Below, one piece after another: positions 39,210 through 60,323 of a stretch of 64,000 nt of DNA. The stretch comes from Octopus sinensis. Taxonomy: Eukaryota. The stretch lies in assembly GCF_006345805.1 (NCBI RefSeq), contig NC_043003.1:101432001-101496000 (forward strand), given 5' to 3'. Below the pieces are notes generated by a model. That model saw only the letters and a list, made by a program, of their open reading frames with translations, had not been told where the DNA came from and made no database searches. A program made the translations under genes and the position numbers. The first letter of the stretch is position 1. Every line of letters begins with the position of its first letter.

Positions 39210-40679
39210 TTCCTGCCAACCAACGTGAAATCAATCTCTGTCTCCTTCCTTCCTGCACACTGAAAGTCACCCTTTTCTCTGTTTTCCTAAACCATGTATT
39301 CGCCACGCACAACTCTTTCTCATCACAAAACTCCAACAGTATCCTTCCTTCCAAATATCTCTCCCCAATTTCATTTCCCCCATGCATACCCTCAAAGCCC
39401 TGGATCCATTTCCCAACATGTCTGTTAAAATCACCCATGCCCAAAACCAATTCATCTACCCTATGTAAGTCCCGCTCAATCACCATTTCAGCAAAGAACT
39501 ACCCTTTCTCAGCGATCCCTCTTCCACTTTGCAGACCATACCCACAAATCACCCTCACCACTTCTTCAAATGCTAACACTACTGTCATCACTGTCACTCT
39601 TTCTCCTGACCTCCACCACCTTCTCACAGATTTTTTCTTTCACCAAAACTCCCACACCTCCAGTACCCATGCTATTTCCTGACCACCACAACGTTGTACC
39701 TTCTTCCCTTGACCCCCACAAATCTTGCACCCTGGCCCCTCCACCTAACCTCCTGCACACAATACACATCCACCCTCCTCTTCCTCAATTCCTCATGCAC
39801 CTCAGTTCCCCTTCCACACAGACTGCCCACATTCCAACTTCCCAATCTCATCCCATCAGCCATCATAAGGCAAGTCATGCTTGCGCAATCTTCTTTTTTC
39901 AGGTAGGCAGGTGCAACCCACCCCGACCTTTGGGCTGGCTGGCTAGTGCCCATTCTCCTTTGCTATTATCATGAGGCATTTTCATAGCTTACCCCCAACC
40001 TCAGTTTCTAGAAATGAGTGGTCCAGAGACCAAAGCCTCTACCACGATTTTTAAGAAACTTTATTTCAATTAAAGTGTGTGTGTGTGTATGTATATATGT
40101 GTGTATATATTACTAAAGAAAGCAAAAAATAAAACAAAAATGATAGTGTTCAGTATGTTGGTGACAAGAATTTCTGCCAAAGAGACATAGTTAAACAGTC
40201 ATACATCATCTCCCTCTTTCTCTCCCTCTCTTTGTTTATCTTCACCACCACACTCACTGTCTATGCCTACTATTACTCTCTCCCCATCATGAGGAATAGT
40301 AGGAATGTCATTGAATAGTGTGACACACTGACACAGAAATTAGTTTTTGCATTTATTATATTAGATATCTTGTCTTTTTAGGAATGTGAGATTACTTGGA
40401 GTGGATTCCCAGTTCCTTCATTTCTGCCCCTTTTAGTCACCTCTTATACCATGCAGGGAATACAGCGACTGCATTCTACCATCCCCCTCCCCCAGTCGCA
40501 GAGCGGGTTTGCTAGTTAACCCATACATAGCTGGGGCTCTTACAGGAGCTACCACTCCTAGCCAGGATAGACCTAGGAATAATAGTGCCTAAGAGGTGGT
40601 TCCACATTCCTCAGACCCTGAAACCAGAGCCCCAGAGTCCTACTATTGGATGTAGTTTAGAGTCATACCCAGGACAATT

Positions 40680-42060
40680 GGAAGGGAAGAGGTGAGGGAA
40701 TCATTGTAGAAGATGGCAAACCGGAAGGCACTAGATAAAGATGGGTGTACAGTGGAATGCCTAAAGAAAAAAGGAGTGACAGTGATTGAATGGTTAGTGA
40801 AGCTTATGAATGTTTGTTATATGGCTGGAAGGGTACCAAAGGACTGGTGCAGTGCCTGTATAGTGCCACTCACTGTACAAGGGGAAAGGGGATAAATGTC
40901 TGTGTGGAAATTTTAGGGGTATAAGTCTGTTCTGTGTTGTTGGTAAACTGTATGGGAGAATTCTGATTGTAAGGATGAAAAACCAGACAGAGAATGTACT
41001 AGGAGAGGAGCAGTGCGGTTTTAGGAGTGGAAGTGGGTGTACAGATCAAATTTTTGTAGTAAGGCAGATGTGTGAGAAGTTTTTGGTTAAAATAGGGATG
41101 TGTATTGGGCCTTTATGGACCTAGAGACAGCATATGAACATGTGGCAGGTGTTGCGGTTGTATGGAGTAAATGGTAGATTGTTGAGAGTGGTACAGAGTT
41201 TTTATAAAGAAAGTAGGGTGGGTGGTGAAGTGAGTGAGTGGTTTGTGAAGGTGGGGTTAAGACAGGGTTGTGTGATGTCTCCGTGATTGTCTAATTTATA
41301 TATGGATGATGTGGTGAGAGAGGTGAATGCTAGAACCTTTGGTAGGGGACCCCAGATGGTGGGAAAAATTGGATAGAAACAGTGAGTCAGTTGTTGTTTA
41401 CTGATGATACAGCACTGGTGGCAGATTTGGAAGAGCAACTGAGGAGACTGGTGGTAGAGTTTGGAAGAGTTTGTGAGAGGAGGAAACTGAAAGGGAATTT
41501 AGCTAAGAGTAAGGTGATGAGATGTTCGAGAGATGGAATGGCTGGTAGGATGGATGTGAGTATAAATGGTGAGATGTTAGAGGAGGTGAGTGTTTTTAAG
41601 TATCTGGTATCACATGTGAGTGTGGATGGTGGGGTTGGCTGAGGAAGTGGGATACAGAGTGAGGGAGGGGAGTAAGATACTTGGAGTTGTGAACGGTATG
41701 CTGAGAGATAAAAGGTTGAGTATGAGGGCATGATTGTGCCGACGATGTTATATGGTGCAGATGTCTGAGGGCTATGGTTGGTGTCAGAGATGGATAGGAT
41801 GAGGAATGAGGAGGTGCGACGGTGAGCAAGGATGAGAGAAAACTAACAATCAAAATGGATAGACGAATGTTGAGGTGGTTTGACCACATGGAGAGGATGG
41901 AGGAGCAGATGGTAAGGAGGGTGATGAAGACAGGCGTGGTAGGCAGAAGAACCAGTGGCAGACTTCAGTTTGTGTGGATGGATGGAGTGAGGGAGAGAAG
42001 CAAGAGAGTTTATATGTGATAGGAAAGCTTGTAGAGTGTTTGTGGATGGATGAATGGATT
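40680..42060 (+). mobile_element. Second RTE-type LINE RT remnant
   Basis: VPKDWCSACIVPL, EEQCGFRSG..TDQIFVVRQMCEK and QLLFTDDTALVAD. Many stops. Confidence 0.8.
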
Positions 42061-42740
42061 TGATGTTGCTCAAAGGGGTACCAAACCAGCATATGTTGTT
42101 GGGCCCCGCTACTGATATTGAGGGTTAAGTTCTATGTGTTGACCCGAGCACCATATGGGGCTCACCTCTTTGAGCTGGGAAATGAATGGAATGCTTGGTG
42201 TGTGTCTTGTTATGGCCACACCCTCCTAAAAAGAAAAAATGGGGAATAGGCCTGCATGTGTATGTATATATACACGTGTGTGTGTGTGATTATATATATA
42301 TAATTTCTTTGAACTGTTTCAGCTTTAAAGCTGTGCTCATGCTGGGGCACATATAAGGCAGGATAGGAAAAGAAGTGTTTTAGTTTCCCTAATCTTTACA
42401 GTCAAAACACATTAAGCTTTCTGTGGATAGAGAAAACAATGGTATTGCTCTGTTTAGCTTTGTTGATATAAAAATATCTGTCCTACCAACTATAAATATT
42501 GACTACAGCTCATCACTTTAGCTATGCGGAAGGACTTTAAAGTAATGTTGTCTAGCTCTTTCATACAGAGATTGCACCTGCTAATTATAGTTATGACTGG
42601 GCTAAGGGAAAACACAATATATTGTAGTTAAACTCATTTGTATACAAATCACTGAGTGAAGAGGATAACAATGTTTTTGTAATGAATGTGTTTTAGATTT
42701 TATTTTTAATTTGTTTTGTTTTTTCTTTTATTCACTTTAG

Positions 42741-42928
42741 AAATCCTGTCAGTCTAGTTTCCAGTCTCACCTGGACAAACTATTTCAAATATTGTCACAA
42801 GAACAGAACCAGCATTGGTGGGCCAGTGTTCACATGATCAAATTAATTGTGACCAGTTGTAATAAAGATGACCTCTTGTCTATAAAACAGTTCACCACAC
42901 TCATAGAGTCAGGTTCTTTACCTCTACA
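42741..42928 (+). CDS. NOL11: NOL11 homologue, exon G (188 nt, phase 0/2)
   Basis: TTCACTTTAG acceptor, GTAAGT donor. Encodes KSCQSSFQSHLDKLFQILSQEQNQHWWASVHMIKLIVTSCNKDDLLSIKQFTTLIESGSLPL. Confidence 0.8.
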
Positions 42929-44298
42929 GTAAGTAACCTCAACATTTTTGTCAGCTTTCACAGACCTGTGAGGATGTTACCTTTTTCGTTTTTCTTTTCT
43001 TCTGTTTTTTTTCTCATCTTTCATACCAGTCAAGTCCTGGTATTTATTTTAAGAACTAAACCCATCCCTAACCTATTAGCATTCAAACTGGCCTTATCTG
43101 GCCTAGATATGCTACTTGCTTTATGTTCTAGCCAGCCAGATCCAGTCTATCACATCTACACTTCAATGCTAGTATAAAATCTATCACGTCATCAATTTCA
43201 AAGCTACAAAATGATGCATGATTAATTAATGTGAATGAAAAGTGTTACATTTGACAGCATGATCTGAATGTTAAAGGACTTAAATATGTTGCTTGTGCCT
43301 TTGTTAAAAATAACCATCATTATTGTAGTGTATTGGCAAAACCATTTCAGCCTCTCTGACAAAATGCTTTGTGATAGTTATGGCTCTTTGCATTTAGAGT
43401 TCAAATGGCTCTAGTGTCAACTATATCTTTCCTCCTTTCTGGGTCAATAAAAATAAAGTACCAGTCAAGTACTGGGGTTGCACTACTCAATAAACCCTTT
43501 CCCTCAAAGATTATTGTTCTTGTGCTTAAACTAGAAACCATTCTTTGGTTCAAGCTGGTAGAATTGTTAGAGAATTGAACAAAATGCCTTGTGCTATTTG
43601 TTCTGGTTCTATATTTTCTGAGTTCAATTCCCACCGAGATCAACTTTACCCATCATCTTTCCAGGTTCAATAAAACAGAGAACCAGTCAAATACTGGGGT
43701 CAATGGTATCAACTAAGGGTTGATAAAAATAAAGTACAAGTACTGGGGCTGTAGTGCTCAATTAATCCCTCCCCTCAAAATTGCTGACCTTGTGCCTAAA
43801 TTAGAAATCATCATCATCATCATTATTATTATTATTATGAAGGCAATGAATTGGCAGAATCATTTAGTGCATCAGACACAATGCTTGGCAGCATTTTGAC
43901 CATCCTCATATGCTAAGTTAAAATTCCCCAAGGTCAATTTTACCTTTCATCCTTTCAAGGTCAATAAAATAAGTACCAGTTACACACTGGGTTGATGTAA
44001 TTGACTAATCCCCTCCTCCCAAATTTCAGGCCTTGTGCTTTTTGTAGAAAGGATTATCATTAGTTCAAATCCTGCCAGAATTGACTTTGTCTTTCATGCT
44101 TTTGGTATTGATGAAATAAAAATTAGTCAATGTATTAGGGTTAATTTTTTTAATGCCTCCTCCCCTTGAAAAACTCATTTTGTGCCAAAAAAGGAAACTA
44201 TTATTATTGATATTTAATATAGTTGTTCTTTGGTACCCAACTCATTTATCTTACATATATTATTTTTAAAAAAACATCTTTTTCTATTCCTTTTCTAG

Positions 44299-44424
44299 GT
44301 GTTTGCCAGATTTGATTAATTCTCTCATTAAGAAAAAGGAACCAAGTCTTGTGGATTTAGCTGTGAAAAAACTTTCAGATATCCCGGAAATTTGTTTAGC
44401 AAATATCATAAAATTTTATCTTAG
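44299..44424 (+). CDS. NOL11: NOL11 homologue, exon H (126 nt, phase 2/2)
   Basis: TTTTCTAG acceptor, GTAAGT donor. Encodes (Q)CLPDLINSLIKKKEPSLVDLAVKKLSDIPEICLANIIKFYL, closely resembling NOL11 LCPDLMEIALKKKDVQLL..FPDIPESVTCACLKIFLS. Confidence 0.9.
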
Positions 44425-45677
44425 GTAAGTTGGCTGGTGCATGGACATGTGCATACACAAGAAGTCCAGTTGGTGAGGAGCAAATAAAGTTATAAGTCTT
44501 CCGATGCACAGTGTGAGCTTTAAGAAAAGGAGAGTGGAGTATGACATGAGTGGGTAATAAACCATCTTCAACTGAGCTAAGTGAAGTAGGCAGAATTATT
44601 GCCTTACTCAGAGAAACAAAATAATAGCAGTGAGTAAGGCTTTAGCTCATGATCATATGAGCTATAGTAGCAATAGTAGACATGCATCTGAACTGATGTG
44701 GTATGATCAATATAGATGTAGTATTTTTAGTGTCCTTTCTGTTAGTATTGCCAAAGGCTCTAGATTAGCACAATGAGTCAAGTGATGAACAAAAAACTTG
44801 CATTATTTAGTCATGTTCTGAGTTCAAATTCCACCTGGTTCAAGTTACCCATCTAAGGTTGATAAAAGAAGTACCAGTCACCAGCTAAGCTCAATATGTG
44901 TATGTGTCCATGTATAAAATCCTTATTATTGTAGCCAATGTTGTTCAAGTGGTGATGTTCTTGATACATTTCATCTTCAAAAATATGTTAGAAGGTCTCA
45001 CTTATTAACATCATTATTAAAGAGAACGTGTTAATGATTATTTTAGCATCTGCATTGTTGTTGTTGTTGCCTCTGCCACCACCATCACCCATATTAATTG
45101 TTTTGGACAGAACTATAACTTAGAGGTAGCCTATAAAACACACCACAAGACTCATTATTATTCTGTGTGTGACTCTATTGTCTGTTGTGTGCAAGATCTC
45201 TTAAGAAATAAGTCTTTTGTATAAGGTTCCTATTGTGGAAGTAAATGGATGATTTAGCTGCTATGTTCAGTTTAAGGACTATGTACAGAAGCATTGTTAT
45301 TCACAGAATGCTAGGGAGTGGCTGTGATGGTCTGTAGCATACATTCATCTTTTGCCTTATTAAATTATATGCAAATATTTGTATAATTACTTATTAGATT
45401 ATATGCAGATATTCATATAATTAATATAAATATCCCACTAATTCCTGAAGGGAGACACAGGAAAAATCATTAATGAGTCATAGATATTTTAACTGATATA
45501 GATATATTTAAAAAATTGAGAAAATGAACTACAAAACATCAAAATATTAATCTGGCACTTTAATGGAAACTGACAAAGAGTGTATGTAAAATTATAACTT
45601 ACCAAAACATTCAAATGACTTTCAAATTCCTCTAGAGTTGCCTCCATCCATTCTGCTCTGTGCTCAAACAACTAATA

Positions 45678-45799
45678 CAGTGGTTCTCAACCCTTTTATT
45701 TAAATGACTTTTCCCTGCTTAATCCTTATGTATATATAAATGAAATTTTGAATTTAGTTCACGGACTCCCCTTTGCGGGCCCTGGGTTGGGAACCACTG
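45678..45799. mobile_element. Short hAT/Charlie-like MITE
   Basis: TIRs CAGTGGTTCTCAACCC / GGGTTGGGAACCACTG (1 mismatch). No clean TSD. Confidence 0.6.
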
Positions 45800-45831
45800 A
45801 AATATCTTTTTTTTTTTTTTTTATGGGACTA

Positions 45832-48350
45832 CTAGCAGAAGCACCCAGGAATGAAATTGTTCCTTATATATTGAAAGAATAAAGCAAAATATGTTGTATA
45901 GAAATTTATTATTCTATATTCAATTTATTCTTCAATTGGGAAATCAACTCTGAATTCATAATACAAAAGAAATAAAATAATAATAATAAAGAACGAAAAT
46001 ATAAGATTTACCACTTTTATGAAGGGCGATAAATTCTATCACATATGCTGAAGGAAATTATGTAAGTGCTTCTGGTTAAACAACATTCTTTGTTTTCTGG
46101 TTTGGAGCATAGACAAATAATTCTTGTGAAGTACCAACCCTGGGGCAACCAACATAAAGTTGACCATGAGAAAAGCAAGGCTCAATTAAGTGCAAGCCAA
46201 TAGATTCCAAAGTCTGACCTTGAGCTTTCTTAATAGACATTGCTAAGCAAAGTCACACTGGGAATTGTGTTCGTTTGAACTTAAATGACGTCTGTTGGTT
46301 TGATTGGAATTCTTGGAATGAAAACCTCTTCCCCAGAGGGACATCCAATGATGATAGTAACGTCTGTCACTTTAAGTGATAATGTCTTCACAATCAACCT
46401 TATCCCATTGCATAATTTAGGAGGAAATAAGTTTCTTAGAAGTATTATTAGGACTCCTACCTTCAGAAAAAGTTTGTGGAGGAGTTCCAGGTGGCTTGAG
46501 AATGAGGAACTCTATTGGGTAATGGACAGCATGATTTTCATCAAGGACTGAATCAACTGATTTGTACTCCTTTATGACTGTTGGAATCTTATTCATTAAA
46601 TTATGGTTAATACTGTCTCATTTTTTTTGAGCAAGAATTGCCGTTTCACACAACCATTTATGTGAATTATAATTATTACCTAAGTCTGGAAATACCCTGT
46701 TCTTCAATTTGGCTGGGGAATTCACCACCATGGCAATATGAGCCAAATTGATATCACCCTTCCCATCAAATGGTACTTTCCCATTTCCTAATTGGAGGAG
46801 CCAGGTTGAAAACTTTTTTGCACATTGGTCCCCATGTAATAAAGCTCGCACATTAGTAATGAAGGAGGATTTCTGTACTTTATTCCATAGGTTTGAAGAC
46901 TTAATACATACTTTTATTTCATCAAGTGTTGTTCATCTCAGAATGACTGGTAATGTCTGTCTGGTCTCCTGATAAAACTAATTTATCTCCTTCCATAGGT
47001 TTATTGTTGCCTCTTATATCCTGTAAGGTCTTGCACCTCTGTGTGACATGGTACATTCATCCCAAATGATCAGGTGGTGTTCACACAACACTTCTGCTGA
47101 ACCTGAACCATTGCTTATGTTACAGATTGGACTGTTATTTTTGACCATGTTTAGCAGTAATTTAAAAGCTGAATGAGCTGTTCGTCCTCCTGGGAGAATG
47201 GTGGCAACAATGCCAGACAGTAGTACAGCAACTGCAATTCTTTTTTGTTGCCTTACCTTGGAGAGAAGCAATGCTACAAATGTTTTACCTGTGCCACCAG
47301 GAGCATCATGAAAGAAAATTCTACTTTTTTTCTCTGATTGACGAAATAATTTTATCATATGCACAACATTGTTCTGGAAGAAGTTTAGGTTCGTGTTCAT
47401 TCACAAATGCAACCAACTCTGTGGTATAATTTATCTCTCTTGCTATGTCTCTTGAAGTTAAACCACTTATTTGACAGTGTTTTTGACAGTCTAGAGCCAG
47501 ACTCTTGCAAATTTTTGCCTCCCATGGCCAAAACTTGATCCTCAATTTCAATCAGTGCTTCATTAAAAATCGTTTCAGAGAACTCAGTATTGATATAAAT
47601 GGATTTGCCTGGTGAACTGCATAGGGTCTGCCAAGTTGATATATGTTCAGTATAACTGCAGAAAGGTTACAGAATTTCCAAGGAGAATCTGGTATTGATG
47701 TTTTAGTCAATGTAATGTCCGTGCTCATCATTTTCTAAAAAACCTTGTTGATAGCATGCTTTCCTATAAGTTTCTCACACATGACCATTTACCTTCCTCA
47801 AATCTTGGAATGATTTGGGACCACATACTTTATGCAAAAGGAGCTGTAAGTAGTAGCATTCTGTTTGGTTTGGGTGGACACAGTAAACTCTTGCAAGAGC
47901 ATCAGCTCATGTTTCCTCTTGTGCCATTTATTGTTTCTCCAGCTGTAATACTTGGGTAATTGTGAGTAAAGGAGTTTTCTTGCATCTTTTATCTACTTGA
48001 CACAACTTTTAAAAAGGAAGGCAGTAAGAGTTCTTTTGAAGAAAGTGCTTGTTGCATAGCTGTTTGTTTTGTAAAGATAACTCTGTGGCTGTAATCTAGA
48101 CGGACTCTCAGATGAATGATGGTTGTGTGCCTCTCATAAATGGGAAAATTGAAGATGTGCCAAAAAGCCTCATTGGTACTGATGTATCTTCCTCTGTCAT
48201 ACTGCGCAACTTCGTCATTTTTATTTATCTGTTGACTGCCATTCTGTATAAGAGTGTATGTTGCAGCATCTAAACCTTTGTTTATATATTTGCAAGCATA
48301 ATTAATACAGTTAACAGAGTTGCAGAAGTCCACTTTGACTACCTGTACTC
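45832..48350 (-). mobile_element. Autonomous-type Helitron remnant (RepHel: Rep end and PIF1 helicase), pseudogenised
   Basis: CKYINKG..DEVAQYDRGRYISTNEAFWHIFNFPIYERH (47989-48333), Walker A DAPGGTGKTF..LPGGRTAHSAFKL..IIWDECTMSH (47014-47400), LLQLGNG and FIPRIPI. CTAG terminus candidate at 45832. Confidence 0.9.
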
Positions 48351-48696
48351 ATCTTTGCTTCACTGTAGAATACTGATCATCTACGTCTTCGGAAACTTTT
48401 TGGAAAATTAAAATGGGGATTAAATGAAAAAATGAGTTATGTGAATATCTTCATGCACACACAAATACATACAGTATCAAACATCAGATGAAATGGATGT
48501 ATGTATATGAGAGAGAGAGAGAGCGAGTGAAGGGGTGTGTTGTCATGTATATGTACATACATAAATATGCATACATCTTTTTTGTATGTGTGTATGTGAG
48601 AGAGAGAGAGTGCCACTTAGACGTCATTCTTTCTCTCTCTCTGTCTCTCACACACATACATACAAAAAAGATGTATGCATATGTATTTATGTATAC

Positions 48697-48709
48697 ATGA
48701 CAACACACC

Positions 48710-48760
<51 letters not shown>

Positions 48761-48765
48761 CTCTC
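48697..48765. repeat. (CT)n microsatellite
   Basis: Directly visible at ~48714-48760. Confidence 0.85.
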
Positions 48766-49430
48766 TCATACACACACACATACATAAATGTATACAAATG
48801 TAAATACAAAAACACACAAGTGCATGTGTGACTGACAACAAATACATAGAGCTGAACATGGTGCACAAAAAGTAATTAAATAAAAACTTTTTACTGAGTG
48901 TGCAGATTCAGGGGAAACTTGTGAACTTAGTAGATAATTCTTTCAGTAATTTATTGTAGTTGTTTGCACATAGTGAATTAAAACTTGAAATGGAAACATT
49001 GAAATAGTGAGTGAGAGATTTCGTTGTTGCTACGTCACTACCAGAAGTTGACATTTTAAAGAAGTGAATCATATATATAAAACACTATTATTTATCTTTA
49101 ATTAAAAAAAATAAACTGAAGAGCCTATTATGTATCCGAGGTCAAATTATTCATATATCCCAAGTATGGAAGCAATTTGCACAGCCGTTTTCACATGAAA
49201 AGCAAATATACTCACACACATATACATACATAGGTGTATTTTATATAAGATATATATATATATATATATATATATTAAGAGATAAGACCAAAAGAGATAT
49301 CACTGCAACTGACTATTAACAACCAGTCATGTGACTTGAGTCAAGAGACTAAGCTCCTGAAACAATATTCCCAAACAGTCACATTCTGTCACAACTAAAC
49401 TTATGTGTTTATTTTGCTTTTACTTCATAG

Positions 49431-49556
49431 CATTGATGAACTTAGTAATGGGGAACAGCAACTAGAAAATAACCACGAAGAAATGGAAGTTGATAAACCA
49501 GAAGATTCTGCAACCTTTGAAAGATGTCCTTTGAATCAGCAGACAGCAGCATATTT
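49431..49556 (+). CDS. NOL11: NOL11 homologue, exon I (126 nt, phase 2/2)
   Basis: TTCATAG acceptor, U12-type donor GTATCCTTT. Encodes acidic (S)IDELSNGEQQLENNHEEMEVDKPEDSATFERCPLNQQTAAY. Confidence 0.85.
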
Positions 49557-50209
49557 GTATCCTTTTTACAGAATGTCACTTAACTACACATTTTACATAC
49601 ATGTTTCAATGACAGGGACTTTGTATTGGCTTTATTTTTTTTATAGTAATTATGAGAGACCTTTCTTAATGCTAATAACTCAGCTGCAAGGCAAAAATAC
49701 AATTTGTCTATTATCTAAGACTGAAGCAAGCTGTGTTACTTGACCAAAGGCACAATACTGTGACTTTGGTAGTATTTGAATTAACAATGTAGTGATTAGT
49801 AAATTATTCAGTTACTTAATCTTATGAGTACAGCTGGTCCTTTATTCTGGATTCTATAGTATTATACTAACGTGAAATGAACAGCCACTGGATATAACAT
49901 CAGTTCATTACAGATTATATTCTTCAGGTGATAGTGTATCAATGCCTTTATAACTAAGTAGGCTGAGATATATATAATAAGCAATCTTGCATTTAAATTG
50001 CAGTAAAATGCCTGAAGTGGATATGAATTCACAACACAAAAGATGTCAGATTTTGAAGCAGATAAAGTATGAAACATATGCATGAAAGTAAAAATGTGGG
50101 GAGGGTGAGGTGTGTAAATCAAATATGTTTTAACTGGGTTCCTTTCTTGCTTTTTTTCTCCTTTTAATGTGTCTATAAAAATTAAAGTATCACCTTAACA
50201 AGGGCTCAG
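49557..50209 (+). other. U12-type (minor spliceosome) GT-AG intron, 653 nt
   Basis: 5' site GTATCCTTT (49557-49565) matches the U12 consensus RTATCCTT. Branch site CCTTAAC at 50193-50199, 10 nt before the intron end. No polypyrimidine tract. Splicing restores the frame (TT+A = Leu). Confidence 0.9.
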
Positions 50210-50288
50210 ATGTCAACTTTTATCCTATCCATTTAGTGATGTATATTTAAGTCATGCTATGAAAACACTTCCTTTTAAATATGCTGTG
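50210..50288 (+). CDS. NOL11: NOL11 homologue, exon J (79 nt, phase 2/0)
   Basis: Encodes (L)CQLLSYPFSDVYLSHAMKTLPFKYAV, similar to NOL11 [22 protein letters not shown]. Donor GTAAGT. Confidence 0.85.
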
Positions 50289-50614
50289 GTAAGTTTTTGT
50301 CCCATCAATATCTTTGTTATCCACCACAGTATCCTATGTTACCTTTAATCAGTATCTCTATCACAAAGCACCAGTACACCTTTAACCTATCATCAACATT
50401 TCCATTACACACTTTCAGAATATCTGTGATCCACCCTATTATCTACCACTTTATAGTTTATAATATTATTAAAACAAAGAAGATACAGTGTATGTGTGTT
50501 TTCATGGCTATCATGATTTTCTTGTGATACATTTTACTTATTAAAGTTTCAAGATGAAATGTAAGGAATGTGTGATGTGGTGATCTTAAGCTTTGTACAT
50601 ATCTTAAATAGGTG

Positions 50615-50785
50615 TGGCTGTGTGGTAAGAAGCTTGCTTCCCAACCACATGGTTTCAGATTCAGTCCCACTGTATGTCACTGTGGGCAGGTGCCTTCTAC
50701 TATATCCTCGGGCTAACCAAATCATTGTAAGTAGATTTGGGAGACAAAAACTGAAAGAAGCCTATCGTGTGCATGTATGTATGAT

Positions 50786-50790
<5 letters not shown>
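50615..50790 (+). mobile_element. SINE 5' half (family of 10365-10770); its 3' half resumes at ~51710-51870 after the mariner
   Basis: GTGTGGCTGTGTGGTAAGAAGCTTGCTTCCCAACCACATGG...AAACTGAAAGAAGCC. The 3' half CCAGCATGGCC-like tail follows 51690. Confidence 0.7.
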
Positions 50791-50824
<34 letters not shown>

Positions 50825-50825
<1 letters not shown>

Positions 50826-51690
50826 GGGTGGTATCAAAAAGTTCCTGGCCTAGTTCTGTAGAGTGCCAACAGATAGCATCACACAGTTCCATATACAGTG
50901 TGCCAAGTGACATCGCCGTGCTTACTTCGCAAGTTGTGAAATTTGTGTTTTTGTGATCACTTGTATGCTATAGTCTGCAGTTTTTGTCATGGACAGGAAC
51001 AAAGAGCCAACGTGAAATTTTGTGTTAAACTTGGAAAGTCTGCTACAGAAACATTGAGCATGCTTCGGCAAGCTTACAGGGACGAGGCAATGGGTCATAT
51101 GCAATGTTTCAAGTGGCACAGGTGCTGCAAAAGCAGAAGAACATCCCTGGAAGATGAGCAATCTGGAAGACCTGCCACAAGCGTAGCCCCCGGAAATGTG
51201 GTATTGTGCATCAAGAATTCATCCCTCAGGGCCAGACCATCAATTGAGGGTTCTACTGCGATGTTTTAAAGTGTTTAAGGGAAGTCATTTGGTGAATGCA
51301 ACCAGATCTGTGAGGCGCAAAGAATTGGATTCTTCATAATAACAACAGACCCTGTCACCAAGCTCTCTTGCCAAAAATAATTTGGTATTGCTTCCGCACC
51401 TGCCTTATTTGCCAGATTTAGTACCTGCTGGCTTCTATCTCTTCCCCAAGATAAAAATGTAGCTCAAAGATCACCTTTTTAACACTGTTGTTGAGATCAA
51501 GAGCAAATTGCAGAAGGTTCTTAACTCATGGAAAATGACTTCCCAGTCAGATTCCAAAAGTGGCAGGAATGCTGGGACCAGTTCATAACTGCAAGGGGAC
51601 TATTTTGGAGGAGGTGATGTTAAAACTTAGGTAAGGAAGTTATTTTTTTATTAAATATAACTAATCCGGGAAACTTTCAATACCATCTCG
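50825..51690 (+). mobile_element. Internally deleted mariner with TIRs and TA TSD
   Basis: TA|CGGGTGGTATCAAAAAGTTCC ... GGAAACTTTCAATACCATCTCG|TA. EQRANVKFCVKLGKSATETLSMLRQAY, VHQEFIPQGQTIN and PYLPDLVP motifs. Confidence 0.85.
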
Positions 51691-52769
51691 TATATATATG
51701 TGTGTATATGCTGGTGTTTGGGTACCCCTGTAACTTAGTGGTTCAGCAAAAGAGACTGATAGAATAAGTATCAAGCTTTTAAAAAATAAGTACTGGGGTT
51801 AATTCATCTGACTAAAATTCTTCAAGGCTGTGCTCCTAGCATGGCCATGTCTAATGGCTGAAACAAATAAAGGATATAAGAAATCAAGTAAATTTTGGGG
51901 TTTCTTAGCTTCATCTATTTGGCATAGGGGTAGGTTATGTTTTACAGTTTTCATTGGTCCAATCACTGGAAACAGAGGAGTAGACTCATTAGAAATAAGT
52001 GTAATGCACAAAATATTCTATTAATTGCTATCATCATAGTTTTAAATATCCACTTTTCCATAGTTCAGATGGAATCTGTTGATTTTCTGTGGTTGGGCAT
52101 TCTTCCTGTCACCAACCATCACCTGTTTTCAAGCAAAGTACTATTTCCCTATAGCCAGGCATCTTTTCACAGATAATCATCATTATCATCACCATTTAAC
52201 ATACGTTTTCCATACTGATATGAGCCAGTCAGCCTGAGGAATGTGCCATGCTCCAATGTTTACTTTGGCATAATTTCTACAGCTGGATGACCTTCCTGAC
52301 ACCAACCAATTCATAGAGTGCAAGACAGGCACTAGTGAGGTCAAAAAGTAACTTGCAAGACAAGATTCCTTGATTGGGTGGAGTGTAATATTAAGGGAGG
52401 TGGCTTTATGCCAGGTATTCAAAGGTTAAAATATAATAGAGGGACAGAAACAAGTGTCTTCTTGTAGAGGAGATATATCGCTACCCCAGTTGGCAAAGGA
52501 GAGAAGATGGTGAAGAGGTGTTATAGTGAACCCTTAAGTTACAGTTAAGTGACCTGTGGGGACACTGTATTTCATTATGCGACCATAATATACTACAAAA
52601 TATAAATGCTTTTATAAGTCAGCACTGTGATGGCAGTGCTATTACATCACGTGTTAATGTTATATTTACAAATTTTCTCATTATTGTGTACGTTTGGCAT
52701 ACTTGGATATGAAATGTCATAACAAAATCAGTGCTGGCTATAATTTATATTGAGTTTGTGGTTGGTTAA

Positions 52770-55349
52770 CCCTTTCATTACTATATTTCTGACCAAAAAA
52801 CACCCCTCATGAGTTTCAATTAAATTCTAAAATAATCATGAATTTAGACTAGTTTCATTAAACAACTCTAACTTTTTTACTTATCAACATATTTATGTGA
52901 TATTTGGAACAGAAGGGTTCTTAATCAATTCCATTGCATAATTTTTGTCTCAAAGTGACTCTAATTACAGGTAAATCCAGGTAAACTGAGCAAAAGGTAA
53001 AAATATCAAAATTTTGTTTAAACATTACCATAGAAAATAAGTCCTCAGCTAATATTTAATTGAGGTATGCAACAAAATTTTGATATAGAAGAATTGTGCA
53101 CATCACTAGATTATCAGTTGAATTTAATGCACAGAAGAACAGGTGTACCATAAAGTTAAAATAAACTAAAATACTGGAATTTGTTTTTTAAGAAAACTAG
53201 AAAATTAAATACAACTGAATGAAATTCATGTATGTGTGTGAACACATACATGAATACACAGGAACATATATAATAAAGATTTACAATAGAAATTAAATCA
53301 AAACTTGTCACTCACCTTACAGGCAAATTAAAATAAAAAGTTAAAACTAAGTAAATTTGAAAAATATTTATACAATCTAATTATACATATATACAAACAA
53401 TATTTACATTATATTTCTATCATGGAAAGTTGTAAAACATCCCACTCTACATACTGCAACCTTGCAGAATGCACATTGGAAGGACGTTTCAACTGGCCGT
53501 CCACTGGGAGTTTTTCTTTGTTGATGTAGACATTCATGGCACTGCCTTTTGCGACCCGATTTTTTCTAATTTATGTAGATCGGCTGAACTCAGAGGAATA
53601 TCTCTCTGGCAGGTTTTGCTTTTCCTTCCTGCAGTTATTTTTTTTTTTTTTTTGAGGAATATCCTGCCCTCAACTGCATTGCTACATCTGCCCGGAACTG
53701 CAGATGGTCGCACCACTTGCGAACCCCTCCTGATTTGGTATATAATATAAATGCATTTACAATGCTCATGTTTACTATATACCAAACCAGGTATCGCCAC
53801 CATTTATTACCCGGTCTACCAACCGGATAATAACTCCTCATCTGGTTCAGCCGATCCACACCGCCCATGTACCTGTTATAATCAAGGTTCACAAACAGAG
53901 TGCCATTTTCATCTACACATGGTTGTGCACTGGTAGATAGAAAATTTATCTGCCTCTTATCTCTGTATGCGGTCGCTAGCAGATTTCCTTTCTGCCGTTG
54001 GATTATTTCACCTCTTTTTTTTTAATTTTGCTTTTTTTATATCCAACGGCAGCCCCTTTCTATTAGCAATTACTGTAGAACACGTATATGTTGCCACAGC
54101 TTCTAAATCCTCCGCAAGTTTGACCGAACTAAAAAATTGGTCAAAACATAATATTCGGCCCTGGTTATGGTATGGAAGAGATAAATTCCAGACCACATCG
54201 TACCCTAGGCCGTGCTGACTAACATTATTGTCTCTTTTCCCTGTATAGAAGCTAAATCCACAGCAGTACCCAGTATTTGCTTCACATATTTTCCAAACTT
54301 TGATCCCCCATTTTGTGGGCTTTCCTGGCATATACTGTTGAAAACGTACTCGGCCTTTATAGCCCACCATACCCTTATCGACGAATAAATACCTTCCAGG
54401 GTTGTAAAATATTTTGTAGGCATTTTGAACACCATCAATGAGGGGTCTTATTTTAAATAAGGGATCAAAGTTTGGTTCTCCACATACGGGGGTACTGCTA
54501 GTGTCTCTTATGTGTAAATATTGATTTAGTTTTATAAATCTTATTCTGGTCATTATATTGGAAACATATTCATCGCCAAAAGGTTCCTGTTTGCTCCAGT
54601 AATTTGTAATTCTGGGCAACTGCCTTATGCCCATAATAATATTTATAGCAAAAAATGCCCGCATTTCGTCTATGGTTGTTGGGTACCACAAGCTATCTTT
54701 TTTTTCGAGCTTGTTTACTTTCTGCATAATGATTCGTCTCCACAGTTATTGCTTCAAACAAGCATGCTGGAAATAATTTTAAAAAAAAAGTCTATTGGTC
54801 TCGCTTCCTGAGAAAGACTATGGGTAGACCCTGTCTCCTCAGAAAAATCGTTAATAGACACTTTTTTTAAATTATTACTCCATTCTGGTGTAAAATTATC
54901 CTTGTTGTCTGTATCGCTGCTTTCAGTTTCTGATGAATCACTTTCAGTTTCAGAATCGCTTTCGGATTCTGAAATATCTGATTCAAATTCATCCACGACG
55001 TGCTTTTCTGCTTCATCCATTCTTCTCCTCGAAATCTCCATATCTTCTATTGAAAAACCTTCAAATTCGGAGTCACTGCTTGATAGTATAAAACTCCTCT
55101 CCATTTTGAAAGTTGAAAAAAATTACCGTTGATAAAAATGTGGAAAAAAATCTTCCAAAATAGCATGCCAAACAATGTCGGATACAATAACTCAACTGTT
55201 AGCAAAGTGAAATCACATGTTTTAACGAGCGTACCAACGAGATTTGGGTTCAAATTTACATTTAAATAACAATAGCTTCTCTCGGCCGGGTTAGTAACAT
55301 GAACCAAAAAATTTTTCGGCTAGGTACAGCCGGGTTAGTAACGAAAGGG
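52770..55349 (-). mobile_element. Full-length piggyBac transposon (2580 bp)
   Basis: TTAA TSDs at 52766-69 and 55350-53. 13-bp TIRs CCCTTTCATTACT / revcomp CCCTTTCGTTACT. Subterminal direct repeat GCCGGGTTAGTAAC at ~55284 and ~55329. Confidence 0.95.
53404..55104 (-). pseudogene. piggyBac (PGBD4-like) transposase, ~565 aa, with 5 apparent frameshifts
   Basis: Acidic N-terminus, catalytic motifs FVDKGMV / CFDQFFSS / GGVDRLNQ, and C-terminal Cys-rich RKRQCHECL..QCAFCKVAVCRVGCFTTFH then TAA. Confidence 0.9.
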
Positions 55350-55519
55350 TTAATGGGTTGGATGGGTGCTGGTGAAGGAGCAAAAACTCCTGAAATATGG
55401 TATATACACTCATTACTCATTTTTCATCTTTGATCTCATTATTGTTTGCATTTGGTGTACTTGGATACCAAACATCATAACAAAATCTGTGCTGACTTCA
55501 ATTTCTATAGAAAATCTGT

Positions 55520-55960
55520 AGAGATAACCTTAGCAATAAGGTGAATATAAGAGAAGTGGTCCAGAGGATTGGACAGGATGAATGGGTTGGTAAGTTTGCA
55601 AGAGTGAGAGAAGAGTGGTGGATGAATAGAGCTGGGGATAGAGGTGAATGCAGTGAAGGGGAACATGAGTGGAGGTGTGATAAATGGTGAATATCAGTCT
55701 GGAGAAAGACAAAGGAAATAGGATTGAGACAGTGAAGTGGCAGCACAGGTGATGTGGAGTTTGAGCAGTGTGTGAAAGATGCTCAATGACAGGGATGAGG
55801 TCAGAAGTACATAGATGTAGAAATACTGGGAGACAAACATGTGTAGTGGGGAGCTGTCATTGGCAGAATGAAAGAGTATGAAGGGGCCATCCAGCAGAAA
55901 ATGAGATGGTAAGAGATGATACTGAGAAGGTGAGAACCAAAATAAGTGACTCATGGGAGC
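55520..55960 (-). mobile_element. Possible old CR1/L2 3'-end remnant
   Basis: Minus strand has a pyrimidine-rich stretch with AATSLSQSYF, loosely like the CR1/L2 C-terminal VASLSLFY motif. Weak. Confidence 0.35.
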
Positions 55961-56394
55961 ACAAAGTGGTGGTGGATAGATTGGGTGCTTTTAGGGCCTC
56001 ATTTGTGCCAAGATGGATGGGTCTTCTCGAGCACAGTAAATCACTTATCACGATCTTTTGTCATCTCCATGAGACTCAACATCCACAGCTCGTTCTTTAT
56101 TACTTCATCCCGCATATATGTATGTGTGCGTCCCTCTTTGGCATGATGGATCTCAAAGTAGACAAAGCTATAAATAACATAGATATACACAGAAGACTTG
56201 ATCAGCCTAGGAGTATAGTCAAACACACTTACCCATGATGCCATGCATTGGGACTTTACTAAAGACCATGTAGTTGGAAAGCAAACTTGGTAACCACACA
56301 GTCATACTTGCACCTAAGACATTTAAATCATTGTAATAATTTCTGAAATTAATTTCAGATACTAATCTCAACTTAATTAATCTCTTTTATTCAG

Positions 56395-56478
56395 ATATTG
56401 CTGAAGTTTCTAAATTACCAGCTACTAGAAGCGTCCATATTACCCAAATCTGATGTGTCTACTCCGGCTGTAACAAAA
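56395..56478 (+). CDS. NOL11: NOL11 homologue, exon K (84 nt, phase 0/0)
   Basis: TCTCTTTTATTCAG acceptor, GTAAGT donor. Encodes ILLKFLNYQLLEASILPKSDVSTPAVTK, similar to NOL11 LFLKYLYFLY...PPTLNQ. Confidence 0.85.
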
Positions 56479-56970
56479 GTAAGTTATTTCATCTTCTGAC
56501 AGGGAATGCTTATTTATTTATCAACTTTTATTATTCAATTGTTTTTTGTTTTTCTTTAACATCCATTTTTCATGATGTTGGTTAGCATAGGTGGAAAGGT
56601 TCAGTTAGACATCTGTTTTATAACTGCTGGACTAATAAACAATGAAATTTTGAATGTTACTTTTTATTTTTCAGTCAAGTGTACAGGATTTGGCAAACTG
56701 AGTAATATTTCTGGCCTCAAGACACGCGCGCAGACACACACAGACACACACACACACAGAGTCTGCAGCAGAGTTTCAACTTGTCACATTGTTGGTTCTA
56801 GTCTATTAAACATGCCCCCCACACACATTTGATGTACAATACATATGTATATATATGTATATATATATATATATGTACATATGTATGTGTATATATATAT
56901 ATAAATTCAGGGTGAATACTTGATAACTGTAAGCACCTGTATATGCCAGTTGGTAGTGTAGGTGATAGGG

Positions 56971-57316
56971 TATATTTATCATAAGAAAAACAGGATGCAA
57001 AGGATTTAGCGGTACATATGTTTCTGGCTTTATTCGACAGTTTATATCGAGTGATAAACGGTATGGACGCTTTGTTTTTGTTTTGGTGTCTCGCTCTGCT
57101 GTATACGACTATGAAGATTCGCATCCCCAACGAAACTTGTATTTTTCTCAAACTTATAATGTAATACATGTCTTTGGTGTGGTAATTGTGCACAGCTGAG
57201 GAAGGCTATTGACATACGTATTACATCAATTATGCATCGATATAAACTGTCCAATAAAACCAGAAACATATGTTCCGCTAAATCCTTTGCATCCTGTTTT
57301 TCTTTTGATAAATATA
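56971..57316. mobile_element. 346-bp MITE with ~80-bp TIRs in a TA context
   Basis: TATATTTATCATAAGAAAAACAGGATGCAAAGGATTTAGCGG... mirrors ...CCGCTAAATCCTTTGCATCCTGTTTTTCTTTTGATAAATATA. Confidence 0.8.
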
Positions 57317-57952
57317 TAAATATATATATACATATATATATATATATGTACGTATGTATATATGTATGTGTATGTATATATATATATATATGTACGTATG
57401 TATATATGTATGTGTATGTATATATATAATATATATATATATATATATGTATATGTATATGTATGTATATATGTATGTGTATGTATATATGTATGTATAA
57501 TGTATGTGTATGTATATAATATGTATGTATATGTATGTGTATATATATATTATGTATATATGTATGTGTGTATTATATATATATGTATATGTATGTGTAT
57601 GTATATATATATATGTATGTATGTATGTGTATGTATATATATATATGTATATATGTATGTGTATGTATATATAATGTATATATGTATGTGTATGTATATA
57701 TATATATATGTATAGTGTATGTGTATGTATATATATATATATGTATATATGTATGTGTATGTATATATATGTATATATGTATGTGTATGTATATATATAT
57801 GTAGTATGTGTATGTATATATATGTATGTGTATGTATATATAATATATATGTATATATGTATGTGTATGTATATATATGTGTATGTATAATATATATATA
57901 TATATGTATATATGTATGTGTATGTATATATATGTATATATGTATGTGTATG

Positions 57953-57985
<33 letters not shown>

Positions 57986-58081
57986 GTATATATGTATGTG
58001 TAGGTATATATATATATTATGTATATATATATATGTATATATGTATGTGTATGTATATATATGTATATATGTATGTGTATG

Positions 58082-58112
<31 letters not shown>

Positions 58113-58323
58113 GTATGTATATATATATGTATGTATGTGTATGTATATATATATATATGTATGTATGTGTATGTATATATGTATGTGTATGTATATATGT
58201 ATATATGTATGTGTATGTATATATGTATATGTGTATGTATATATATATATATGTATATATGTATGTGTATGTGTATGTATATATGTATATATGTATGTGT
58301 ATGTATATATATGTATGTGTATG

Positions 58324-58354
<31 letters not shown>

Positions 58355-58393
58355 GTATGTATATATATATATATGTATATATGTATGTGTATG

Positions 58394-58424
<31 letters not shown>

Positions 58425-58427
58425 GTA

Positions 58428-58462
<35 letters not shown>

Positions 58463-58465
58463 GTA

Positions 58466-58500
<35 letters not shown>

Positions 58501-58505
58501 GTATG

Positions 58506-58536
<31 letters not shown>

Positions 58537-58542
58537 GTATGT

Positions 58543-59799
58543 CATCATCATCATCATCGTTTAACGTCCGTTTTCCGCGCTAGCACGGGTTGGACGGTTT
58601 CGACCGGGGTCTGGGGTGCTCAGGACTGCTCCAGTCTAGTCTGGCAGTGTTTCTACAGCTGGATGCCCTTCCTAATGCCAACCACTCCGCGAGTGTAGTG
58701 GGTGTTTTTTACGTGCCACCTGCACAGGTGCCAGAGGGGTCTGGCATCGGCCACGTTCGGATGGTGCTTTTTATGTGGGTGGGGGGGGGTACGAAAATAA
58801 TAGGGGAGCACCAGTGGGGAGGGGTGGTTCAGAGAAATGATGACAGGTTCTAGGCAAGTAGAAGTAGGGATATCAAGAGAGGGGTAATGCATGGTGAAAT
58901 AGCGTGTTGAAGAGGGGGGGTTTCGAAGAGTAGACACCTATAATGATGGTGGAGAAAGCGACATCCGGTATAGATGGAACAAAAATATAGAGATATCCGG
59001 TATTGGTGGTGGGGCTGGGCAAGGGCGGTTGCACCGGGAATATCGAAGGTTGAACTTTAGAGAAACGGGCGGGAATGGCGATGTTTTTAGGGTGGCATGT
59101 AGAAAGAAAAGGAAAGCAAAGCAGATTGGTGGTTATAAGTTCAAAACATTTAAACGGTAGACAAATGTATGTATGTATGAAATAGAAGGGAGAAATCTTA
59201 GCCTGCTCATGGACATCGCTGCAAGTCAGGGGAAGAAATGATAGTGAATGGTGGAGATCGAATTAAAGGGAATATGCGAAGGTTGAACTTTAGAGAAACG
59301 GGCGGGAATGGCGATGTTTTTAGGGTGGCATGTAGAAAGAAAAGGAAAGCAAAGCAGATTGGTGGTTATAAGTTCAAAACATTTAAACGGTAGACAAGTA
59401 TGTATGTATGAAATAGAAGGGAGAAATCTTAGCCTGCTCATGGACATCGCTGCAAGTCAGGGGAAGAAATGATAGTGAATGGTGGAGATCGAATTAAAGG
59501 GAATATGCGAAGGTTGAACTTTAGAGAAACGGGCGGGAATGGCGATGTTTTTAGGGTGGCATGTAGAAAGAAAAGGAAAGCAAAGCAGATTGGTGGTTAT
59601 AAGTTCAAAACATTTAAACGGTAGACAAATGTATGTATGTATGAAATAGAAGGGAGAAATCTTAGCCTGCTCATGGACATCGCTGCAAGTCAGGGGAAGA
59701 AATGATAGTGAATGGTGGAGATCGAATTAAAGGGAAATGCGAAGGTTGAACTTTAGAGAAACGGGCGGGAATGGCGATGTTTTTAGGGTGGCATGTAGG
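58543..59799. repeat. 1.25-kb cassette copy 1: RTE-tail-like repeat, G-rich spacer, ~232-bp tandem repeat x3.2
   Basis: GAAGGTTGAAC starts at 59045, 59278, 59509 and 59741. Confidence 0.9.
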
Positions 59800-59939
59800 T
59801 GTATGTTATATATATATGTATATATGTATGTGTATGTAATATATTTATATATATGTATATATGATGTGTTATGTATATATATATTATATGTATTATGTAT
59901 GTGTATATGTATATATATGTATATATGTATGTGTATGTG

Positions 59940-59970
<31 letters not shown>

Positions 59971-60187: not shown

Positions 60188-60218
<31 letters not shown>

Positions 60219-60222
60219 GTAT

Positions 60223-60254
<32 letters not shown>

Positions 60255-60291: not shown

Positions 60292-60323
<32 letters not shown>

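What the first reader, a model, noticed from the sequence alone, without database searches (positions are those of the whole stretch)
49557..50209. U12-type minor intron in the NOL11 homologue
Seen: donor GTATCCTTT, branch site CCTTAAC 10 nt from the intron end, no pyrimidine tract, and the frame and NOL11 similarity restored across the splice. All other donors are U2-type (GTAAG/GTAAA). At 653 nt it is the shortest of the 10 complete introns (others 1.1-10.8 kb), and I see no TE in it. Established: U12 introns are rare, often ancient and can be rate-limiting. Inference: an rRNA-processing factor under minor-spliceosome control in a mollusc, with intron length possibly constrained.
Basis: partly seen in the sequence, partly recalled or inferred. 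Interest (0 to 1): 0.75.

Follow-up and report, generated by a model that had tools for sequence, protein, structure and literature searches.

The report
Ancient U12-type intron in octopus NOL11
The 653-base intron is a genuine minor-spliceosome (U12-type) intron in the octopus NOL11 gene, but it is the same intron already known in human NOL11 and is kept at the same codon from sponges to vertebrates, so it is real and ordinary.

Summary
Window 49557-50209 is intron 9 of an octopus NOL11 gene. It has donor GTATCCTTT, branch site ACCTTAAC with 11 nt between the branch A and the exon, no pyrimidine tract, and phase 2. The nine other complete introns, and two further downstream, have GTAAG/GTAAA donors and pyrimidine tracts.

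The same genome encodes U11, U12, U4atac and U6atac snRNAs, and their recognition sequences are complementary to this intron's signals. I mapped NOL11 gene structures in ten other animals: cuttlefish, bivalve, limpet, brachiopod, annelid, hemichordate, skate, teleost, toad and sponge. In all ten, the intron in the same alignment column and phase, followed by the same 79-nt exon, has U12-type signals. None of the 155 other introns does.

Human NOL11 has been listed as a U12-intron gene since 2007, with a GT-AG subtype intron in the 3' part of the gene. Octopus sinensis minor introns have already been surveyed genome-wide.

The orthologous intron ranges from 167 to 4774 nt, sits mid-rank in most genes, and is second longest in the sponge. 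Control of NOL11 by the minor spliceosome is untested in octopus. Low novelty.

The parts
17882..64000 (+). NOL11 gene body within the window. Exons lie at 17882-18079, 20894-21038, 24393-24551, 26010-26092, 30608-30787, 31872-31940, 42741-42928, 44299-44424, 49431-49556, 50210-50288 and 56395-56478. The last two exons lie beyond the window, at window-equivalent 70057-70167 and 71616-71738.
   Evidence: Exact mapping of the 557-aa Octopus NOL11 protein P0001. Pfam gives Nol11_C 56.2 bits and NOL11_N 40.9 bits, both above the 25-bit cut-offs.
49431..49556 (+). Exon 9 (126 nt), encoding ...IDELSNGEQQLENNHEEMEVDKPEDSATFERCPLNQQTAAY plus the first two bases (TT) of Leu426.
49557..50209 (+). Intron 9, a U12-type (minor) GT-AG intron of 653 nt, phase 2.
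   Evidence: It is single-copy in the genome.
49557..49565 (+). U12-type 5' splice site GTATCCTTT, a 9/9 match to the consensus. Positions +4 to +10 (UCCUUUU) are complementary to nt 2-8 of the genome's own U11 snRNA (5'-UAAAAGGGU). UCCUU is complementary to AAGGA of its U6atac.
   Evidence: Duplex energy is -6.9 kcal/mol with U11 and -8.1 with U6atac; the other nine donors reach no better than -4.0 and -4.3. It matches only 3/9 positions of the U1-type consensus CAGGTAAGT, against 6-8/9 for the others.
50192..50199 (+). Branch-point sequence ACCTTAAC, 7/8 to TCCTTAAC. The putative branch A is 50198. CCUUA and C pair with GUAAGG of the genome's own U12 snRNA (5'-AUGCCUUAAACUAAUGAGUAAGGAAAAU), leaving A50198 bulged.
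   Evidence: There are 11 nt between the branch A and the exon.
50208..50209 (+). 3' splice site AG, with no pyrimidine tract before it (45% Y). The earlier AG at 50201-50202 lies only 3-4 nt from the branch A.
50210..50288 (+). Exon 10 (79 nt), encoding CQLLSYPFSDVYLSHAMKTLPFKYAV. It is followed by the U2-type donor GTAAGT at 50289. The exon is exactly 79 nt in all 11 species compared.

Best explanation
Window 49557-50209 is a bona fide U12-type (minor-spliceosome) intron of the GT-AG subtype in the octopus orthologue of NOL11, a nucleolar small-subunit processome protein.

Inferred mechanism, following established minor-spliceosome biology. The U11/U12 di-snRNP recognises the intron as a unit. 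U11 pairs with the 5' splice site (G)UAUCCUUUU. U12 pairs with the branch sequence ACCUUAAC and bulges A50198. No pyrimidine tract or U2AF-type recognition is needed. U4atac/U6atac.U5 then joins, U6atac replaces U11 on UCCUU, and the AG 11 nt downstream of the branch A is used as the acceptor. This joins TT|A into Leu426.

The intron is orthologous to the known human and mouse NOL11 U12 intron and was already present before sponges and bilaterians diverged. If it is retained, translation runs 62 codons into the intron to a stop at 49741-49743. That would remove the last ~130 residues (most of Nol11_C) or expose the mRNA to nonsense-mediated decay.

Shown here: the signals, the reading frame, the snRNA genes and their complementarity, and the orthology. 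Inferred: actual use of the minor spliceosome in vivo, and any rate-limiting effect.
For: - The sequence signals sit exactly on the junction.
- The junction reproduces the database protein P0001 at 100% identity. The protein alignment of 11 species has no indel there.
- The donor is 9/9 to GTATCCTTT and only 3/9 to the U1-type consensus. The branch site is 7/8. Pyrimidine content is 45%.
- The same genome has U12 (126.6 bits), U11 (94.5), U6atac (96.9) and U4atac (83.8), all above the Rfam cut-offs. Their recognition sequences are intact.
- Donor duplexes with its own U11 and U6atac are far stronger than for the other nine donors.
- In Sepia, Tegillarca, Patella, Lingula, Owenia, Ptychodera, Bufo, Leucoraja, Megalops and the sponge Corticium, the intron in the same alignment column and phase has a GTATCC-type donor (GTATCT in Lingula) and a CCTTAAC-like branch site with 10-16 nt between the branch A and the exon. 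That is 11 of 11 at this column.
- None of the 155 other introns in these genes passes both criteria.
- The downstream exon is 79 nt in all eleven species.
- Literature: human NOL11 is listed among U12-intron genes (PMC1874599). Its U12 GT_AG intron is at chr17:67738355-67738931 and is retained on RBM41 knockout (PMC11039992 Table S6). Mouse Nol11 is listed as a minor-intron transcript (PMC12589426).
Against: - No transcript evidence from octopus was available, so use of the junction rests on gene models and on protein conservation across the junction.
- intronIC itself could not be run. My classifier is a simple consensus-match count.
- The branch site has A instead of T at its first position.
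- U12-branch-site duplex energy did not separate this intron from the others, because A-rich U12 sequence pairs with any pyrimidine tract.
- Human orthology of position is inferred from three other vertebrates plus the published human coordinates. It was not aligned directly.
Confidence: 0.93

Rival explanations
1. This is an ordinary U2-type intron whose ends resemble U12 signals by chance and which is removed by the major spliceosome.
For: GTATCCTT and CCTTAAC-N6-12-AG each occur elsewhere in the window at chance frequency. GT-AG termini are compatible with both spliceosomes.
Against: The donor matches only 3/9 of the U1-type consensus and there is no pyrimidine tract. Both motifs coincide with the one frame-preserving junction. 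The same two motifs recur at the same codon in 10 of 10 other animals and in 0 of 155 other introns. All four minor snRNAs are present.
Confidence: 0.02
2. The annotated junction is wrong. Transcripts would then use another donor or acceptor, or the exons belong to a mis-predicted model.
For: The gene model P0001 is computational and is demonstrably incomplete at its N-terminus. No RNA-seq was available.
Against: Any other in-frame pair would introduce an indel into a block that aligns without gaps in 11 species. It would also change the invariant 79-nt exon. Of the three positions that give the same protein, only 49556^50210 has canonical ends. Independent annotations in ten other genomes place the intron at the same spot.
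Confidence: 0.02
3. The intron is U12-type and serves as a selected regulatory valve. Slow or regulated minor splicing would limit NOL11 output and so couple ribosome biogenesis to minor-spliceosome activity, with intron length under constraint.
For: The type and position are retained from sponge to vertebrates in 11 of 11 sampled lineages. Retention gives a premature stop. The human NOL11 U12 intron was the strongest retention event on RBM41 knockout, with delta-PSI 0.21.
Against: Length is not conserved: it ranges from 167 to 4774 nt, is mid-rank in most genes and second longest in the sponge. No internal sequence is conserved. All sampled species belong to lineages that retain minor introns. 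A pan-eukaryotic survey argues that such retention is largely explained by neutral processes and gene age (PMC10639083). Nine U2-type intron positions in this gene are shared just as widely, so conservation of position alone is not special.
Confidence: 0.15

Closest known systems
The U12-type GT-AG intron of human NOL11 (chr17:67738355-67738931, hg38) and mouse Nol11
   Same: Same gene family and same GT-AG subtype. It lies in the 3' part of the gene within the Nol11_C region. Three other vertebrates (Bufo, Leucoraja, Megalops; intron 14 of 17) have it in exactly the octopus alignment column and phase, followed by the same 79-nt exon.
   Different: Different species. The length is 653 nt against 577 nt in human. 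The branch site starts with A rather than T. The human position was not aligned directly here.
U12-type (minor, formerly 'AT-AC') introns in general, as classified by intronIC and catalogued in U12DB, IAOD and MIDB
   Same: A rigid 5' splice site /GTATCCTTT, a TCCTTAAC-like branch site 10-15 nt from the acceptor, no pyrimidine tract, non-zero phase, and location in an old housekeeping gene that is rich in introns.
   Different: Nothing of substance. It is a textbook example of the more common GT-AG subtype.
Genome-wide minor-intron survey that included Octopus sinensis (Larue and Roy 2023, PMC10639083)
   Same: The same organism group was scanned with intronIC and used in a pairwise conservation matrix together with human and Lingula.
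   Different: The held text and supplement contain no gene-level table. I therefore could not confirm that this particular intron is in their list.

Membership tests
U12-type (minor-spliceosome) intron, GT-AG subtype | 5' splice site matching /[AG]TATCCTT(T) | tested here: met
   GTATCCTTT at 49557-49565, 9/9. The other nine donors score 2-6/9.
U12-type (minor-spliceosome) intron, GT-AG subtype | TCCTTAAC-like branch-point sequence about 10-15 nt upstream of the 3' splice site | tested here: met
   ACCTTAAC at 50192-50199, 7/8, with 11 nt between branch A 50198 and the exon. No U2-type intron in the 11 genes reaches 7/8 in that window.
U12-type (minor-spliceosome) intron, GT-AG subtype | No polypyrimidine tract between branch site and acceptor | tested here: met
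   45% pyrimidine in positions -25 to -3, against 64-91% in the other nine introns.
U12-type (minor-spliceosome) intron, GT-AG subtype | The organism possesses the minor-spliceosome snRNAs U11, U12, U4atac and U6atac | tested here: met
   All four are found in the same genome above the Rfam gathering scores: 94.5, 126.6, 83.8 and 96.9 bits.
U12-type (minor-spliceosome) intron, GT-AG subtype | Complementarity of the 5' splice site to U11 and U6atac, and of the branch site to U12 | tested here: met
   The genome's own U11 (5'-UAAAAGGG), U6atac (AAGGAGAGA) and U12 (GAGUAAGGAAAA) were read. Donor duplexes are -6.9 and -8.1 kcal/mol, against no better than -4.0 and -4.3 for the other donors. The U12 duplex energy was not discriminating, so branch-site pairing was judged by inspection only.
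U12-type (minor-spliceosome) intron, GT-AG subtype | The orthologous intron is U12-type in other species | tested here: met
   10 of 10 other animals have it in the same alignment column and phase. Published for human and mouse.
U12-type (minor-spliceosome) intron, GT-AG subtype | Removal in vivo depends on the minor spliceosome; the junction is seen in transcripts | not testable with these tools
   No octopus transcript data or perturbation data could be reached.
U12-type (minor-spliceosome) intron, GT-AG subtype | intronIC (PWM plus SVM) probability above threshold | not tested
   intronIC and its matrices are not installed. A consensus-match proxy was used instead.
NOL11 (nucleolar protein 11, t-UTP subcomplex of the SSU processome) | NOL11_N (PF08168) and Nol11_C (PF20998) domains above the curated cut-offs | tested here: met
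   Nol11_C 56.2 bits and NOL11_N 40.9 bits, cut-offs 25. NOL11_N covers only profile positions 105-333 because the model lacks the first exons.
NOL11 (nucleolar protein 11, t-UTP subcomplex of the SSU processome) | Orthology to named NOL11 proteins | tested here: met
   The best relatives in 1.8 billion representatives are proteins named nucleolar protein 11 from molluscs, Lingula, annelids, echinoderms and vertebrates. The ten octopus introns sit at, or within two alignment columns of, intron positions in the other animals; six positions are shared by all ten bilaterians.
NOL11 (nucleolar protein 11, t-UTP subcomplex of the SSU processome) | Role in pre-rRNA transcription and processing | not testable with these tools
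   The function is inferred from vertebrate literature only.

The most novel reading that the evidence does not exclude
The NOL11 U12 intron, kept in type, codon position and phase since before sponges and bilaterians diverged, could be a selected throttle. It would tie small-subunit processome supply, and hence ribosome production, to minor-spliceosome activity in all animals, with retention producing a premature stop. Octopus would then offer a non-vertebrate system to test that coupling.
Probability: 0.12. Interest if true: 0.5.

Novelty: already known. Interest (0 to 1): 0.15.

Why it matters
The finding matters little beyond correct annotation. It confirms that the octopus NOL11 model is spliced correctly at this junction. 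It also shows that a well-known vertebrate minor intron is orthologous across Metazoa, including a sponge. That gives one more data point on the antiquity of minor introns in ribosome-biogenesis genes.

The practical by-products are more useful to annotators. The octopus NOL11 model lacks about 100 N-terminal residues because its first exons sit on an unplaced contig next to a scaffold gap. The comparison across species also removes the suggestion that the length of this intron is constrained.

Tried and rejected
- Six-frame Pfam searches of the whole genome with NOL11_N and Nol11_C did not hit the window at all. The exons are too short individually. The NOL11_N hits instead revealed the missing first exons on contig C12985.
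- An Rfam scan of the window found nothing, so the intron hosts no snoRNA or other known RNA.
- A profile search with a 35-sequence alignment returned only the two cephalopod proteins. Orthologues were taken from the all-against-all HMMER search instead.
- Look-ups for the coral Montipora, for both proteins, found no gene on record. A sponge served as the non-bilaterian instead.
- Duplex energy between the last 40 intron bases and U12 did not discriminate, because pyrimidine tracts pair with the A/G-rich U12 segment. I dropped it as a criterion.
- BLASTN of the octopus intron against the ten orthologous introns found no conserved internal element.
- The supplement of the pan-eukaryotic survey held no gene-level list.
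- I considered and rejected a chance U2-type look-alike, a wrong junction, and constrained intron length. Reasons are given under the rival explanations.

Full report
**The observation**

The window is G000:C7:101432001-101496000 of a 2.72-Gb, 13,516-contig genome. Its exons are 100% identical to a 557-aa protein recorded as 'Hypothetical predicted protein [Octopus vulgaris]' and, in UniRef, as 'Nucleolar protein 11, n=2 Tax=Octopus' (P0001). From memory, the assembly statistics fit Octopus sinensis.

Reading 49300-50500 shows ttt|GTATCCTTTTTAC at 49557. It also shows tcACCTTAACaagggctcAG|atgtca ending at 50209. Exhaustive junction search against P0001 gives eleven exons and ten complete introns in the window. 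The introns are 2814, 3354, 1458, 4515, 1084, 10800, 1370, 5006, 653 and 6106 nt.

Intron 9 (49557-50209) is phase 2 and splits Leu426 as TT|A. Of the three cut positions that would give the same protein, only 49556^50210 has GT...AG ends. The other nine donors are GTAAGT, GTAAAT, GTAAAC or GTAAGG, with pyrimidine-rich 3' ends of 64-91% Y. Intron 9 has 45% Y. Two further introns downstream of the window are also GTAAGT and GTAAGA.

**Chance**

GTATCCTT occurs three times in the window against 2.4 expected. CCTTAAC-N6-12-AG occurs twice against 2.7 expected. The motifs alone are therefore unremarkable. What is not chance is that both fall on the single junction that restores the frame, and that the same holds in every orthologue examined, as described below.

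**The gene**

P0001 scores 56.2 bits on Nol11_C and 40.9 bits on NOL11_N, both with cut-offs of 25. A HMMER search of 1.84 billion representatives gave 127 relatives. Those with names are 'nucleolar protein 11' from bivalves, limpets, Lingula, annelids, a hemichordate, sea urchins, skate, teleost, toad, lizard, lamprey, coral and sponge.

**The splicing machinery**

The same genome carries all four minor snRNAs above the Rfam gathering scores: U12 at 126.6 bits, U11 at 94.5, U6atac at 96.9 and U4atac at 83.8. Their sequences were read:

- U11 begins 5'-UAAAAGGGU.
- U12 begins 5'-AUGCCUUAAACUAAUGAGUAAGGAAAAU.
- U6atac contains AAGGAGAGA.

Intron positions +4 to +10 (UCCUUUU) can pair with U11 nt 8-2, and UCCUU with AAGGA of U6atac. 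In the branch site, CCUUA and C pair with GUAAGG of U12 with A50198 bulged. The pairings were worked out by inspection.

Computed donor duplexes are -6.9 kcal/mol with U11 and -8.1 with U6atac for intron 9. The other nine donors reach no better than -4.0 and -4.3. The donor matches only 3 of 9 positions of the U1-type consensus, against 6-8 for the others.

**Orthologous introns**

I fetched the NOL11 genes of ten other animals and mapped each protein exactly onto its gene:

- Acanthosepion (Sepia) pharaonis, cuttlefish
- Tegillarca granosa, bivalve
- Patella caerulea, limpet
- Lingula anatina, brachiopod
- Owenia fusiformis, annelid
- Ptychodera flava, hemichordate
- Bufo gargarizans, toad
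- Leucoraja erinacea, skate
- Megalops cyprinoides, teleost
- Corticium candelabrum, sponge

In a MAFFT alignment, all eleven genes have a phase-2 intron in the same column, inside the L/I/F codon that precedes (C/N/R)-x-(L/I/V)-(L/I). In all eleven it is followed by an exon of exactly 79 nt.

The ten orthologous donors are GTATCCTTG (Sepia, Patella, Ptychodera), GTATCCTTT (Tegillarca, Owenia, Leucoraja), GTATCTTTT (Lingula), GTATCCTGT (Bufo), GTATCCTGC (Megalops) and GTATCCATA (Corticium). The branch sites are TCCTTAAT, ACCTTGAC, GCCTTAAC, TCCTTAAC, TCCTTAAT, TTCTTGAC, TCCTTAAT, ACCTTAAC, TCCTTAGC and ACCTTAAC. Between 10 and 16 nt separate the branch A from the exon.

I applied the joint criterion 'donor at least 7/9 and branch site at least 6/8 in the correct window'. 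Eleven of eleven introns at this column pass, and none of the 155 other introns does. The intron is therefore U12-type throughout and was present before sponges and bilaterians diverged.

**What is already known**

- Human NOL11 was listed among U12-intron genes in 2007 (PMC1874599).
- Its U12 GT_AG intron is at chr17:67738355-67738931. It was the strongest intron-retention event in RBM41-knockout cells, with delta-PSI 0.21 (PMC11039992 Table S6).
- Mouse Nol11 is listed among minor-intron transcripts (PMC12589426).
- Octopus sinensis was one of the species scanned with intronIC and used in the conservation matrix of the pan-eukaryotic survey (PMC10639083). That survey also reports that molluscs are relatively rich in minor introns and that conservation among animals is substantial.

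The octopus intron is thus an orthologue of a known feature in a genome already surveyed for this class.

Length constraint is not supported. The orthologous intron measures 653, 1354, 882, 167, 269, 4774, 3883, 216, 807, 254 and 781 nt. Within each gene it ranks 1/10, 8/15, 9/14, 1/15, 6/14, 8/14, 9/12, 8/17, 6/17, 8/17 and 20/21 by length (the skate rank was recomputed by hand). In the sponge it is 781 nt against a median of 67 nt.

In octopus the intron is short because it is free of insertions. It matches only itself in the genome. The larger introns hold DDE_1, RVT_1 (plus PHD), PIF1-helicase and piggyBac-type DDE_Tnp_1_7 remnants, as well as long microsatellites. No internal intron sequence is conserved between species.

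'Minor-spliceosome control' remains an inference. Retention would read 62 codons into the intron to a stop at 49741-49743, which is compatible with nonsense-mediated decay or a truncated protein. No octopus expression data were available. Nine U2-type intron positions in this gene are conserved across as many species. Conservation of position by itself is therefore not evidence of a regulatory role.

**Verdict**

This is a real, textbook U12-type GT-AG intron. It is orthologous to the known NOL11 minor intron of vertebrates and ancient in animals. It is correctly spotted, but it is neither new nor surprising.

Noticed in passing
window 16081-16180; G000:C12985 (L002 1492-1644 and L001 1501-1617, minus strand): A 100-N scaffold gap lies 1.7 kb upstream of the first annotated NOL11 exon, whose acceptor is CAG|ATGAAC at 17881/17882 and which corresponds to Sepia exon 4. 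The first two coding exons (76-79% identical to Sepia residues 1-51 and 45-83) were found only on an unplaced 25-kb contig. The 557-aa database model is therefore N-terminally truncated by about 100 residues; Pfam NOL11_N starts at profile position 105.
   Followed up: partly
window 12000-16080: A GC-rich block (58-59% GC against about 35% elsewhere) abuts the gap and contains a 208-bp unit repeated twice at 14330-14739. Its nature (CpG island, satellite or collapsed repeat) was not determined.
   Followed up: no
window 22238-22612(-), 34736-35581(-), 41346-41639(+), 46621-47400(-), 53638-54745(-): Transposable-element remnants lie inside NOL11 introns 2, 6, 8 and 10. They are a DDE_1 endonuclease, a reverse transcriptase with PHD finger, a weak second RT fragment (20.3 bits, below the 29.6-bit cut-off), a PIF1-like helicase (Helitron-like) and a piggyBac-type transposase at 204.8 bits. 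They account for much of the size difference between these introns and the U12 intron.
   Followed up: partly
window 56479-64000 and beyond: Intron 11 is about 13.6 kb, running from 56479 to window-equivalent 70056. Its first 7 kb is almost pure TA/CA-type microsatellite; GC falls to 15% at 62-64 kb with strong G-over-C skew. The last two NOL11 exons lie outside the window at C7:101502057-101502167 and 101503616-101503738.
   Followed up: partly
whole genome G000 (for example L023, L024): At least 43 U6atac-like sequences score above the Rfam cut-off. U11 has five matches above its cut-off, U12 three and U4atac one. This suggests a U6atac-derived retropseudogene or SINE-like family in octopus.
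   Followed up: no
L015 1-1548, L016 1-176, L017 1-203: SMG1 lies head-to-head immediately upstream of NOL11 in the bivalve Tegillarca, the limpet Patella and the brachiopod Lingula, a conserved lophotrochozoan gene pair. Whether this holds in octopus could not be checked because the NOL11 5' end is on an unplaced contig.
   Followed up: no
proteins P0070, P0091, P0113: NOL11-like proteins, mainly over the Nol11_C region, turn up outside animals: Phalansterium (Amoebozoa, E=1.3e-7), Hemimastix (E=5.6e-6) and Fonticula alba (E=3.2e-4). From memory, NOL11 is usually described as metazoan-specific.
   Followed up: no
L027 4355-5135 (Corticium candelabrum): In the sponge, whose NOL11 introns are mostly 52-140 nt, the orthologous U12-type intron is 781 nt, the second longest of 21. 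This is the opposite of the octopus pattern.
   Followed up: yes
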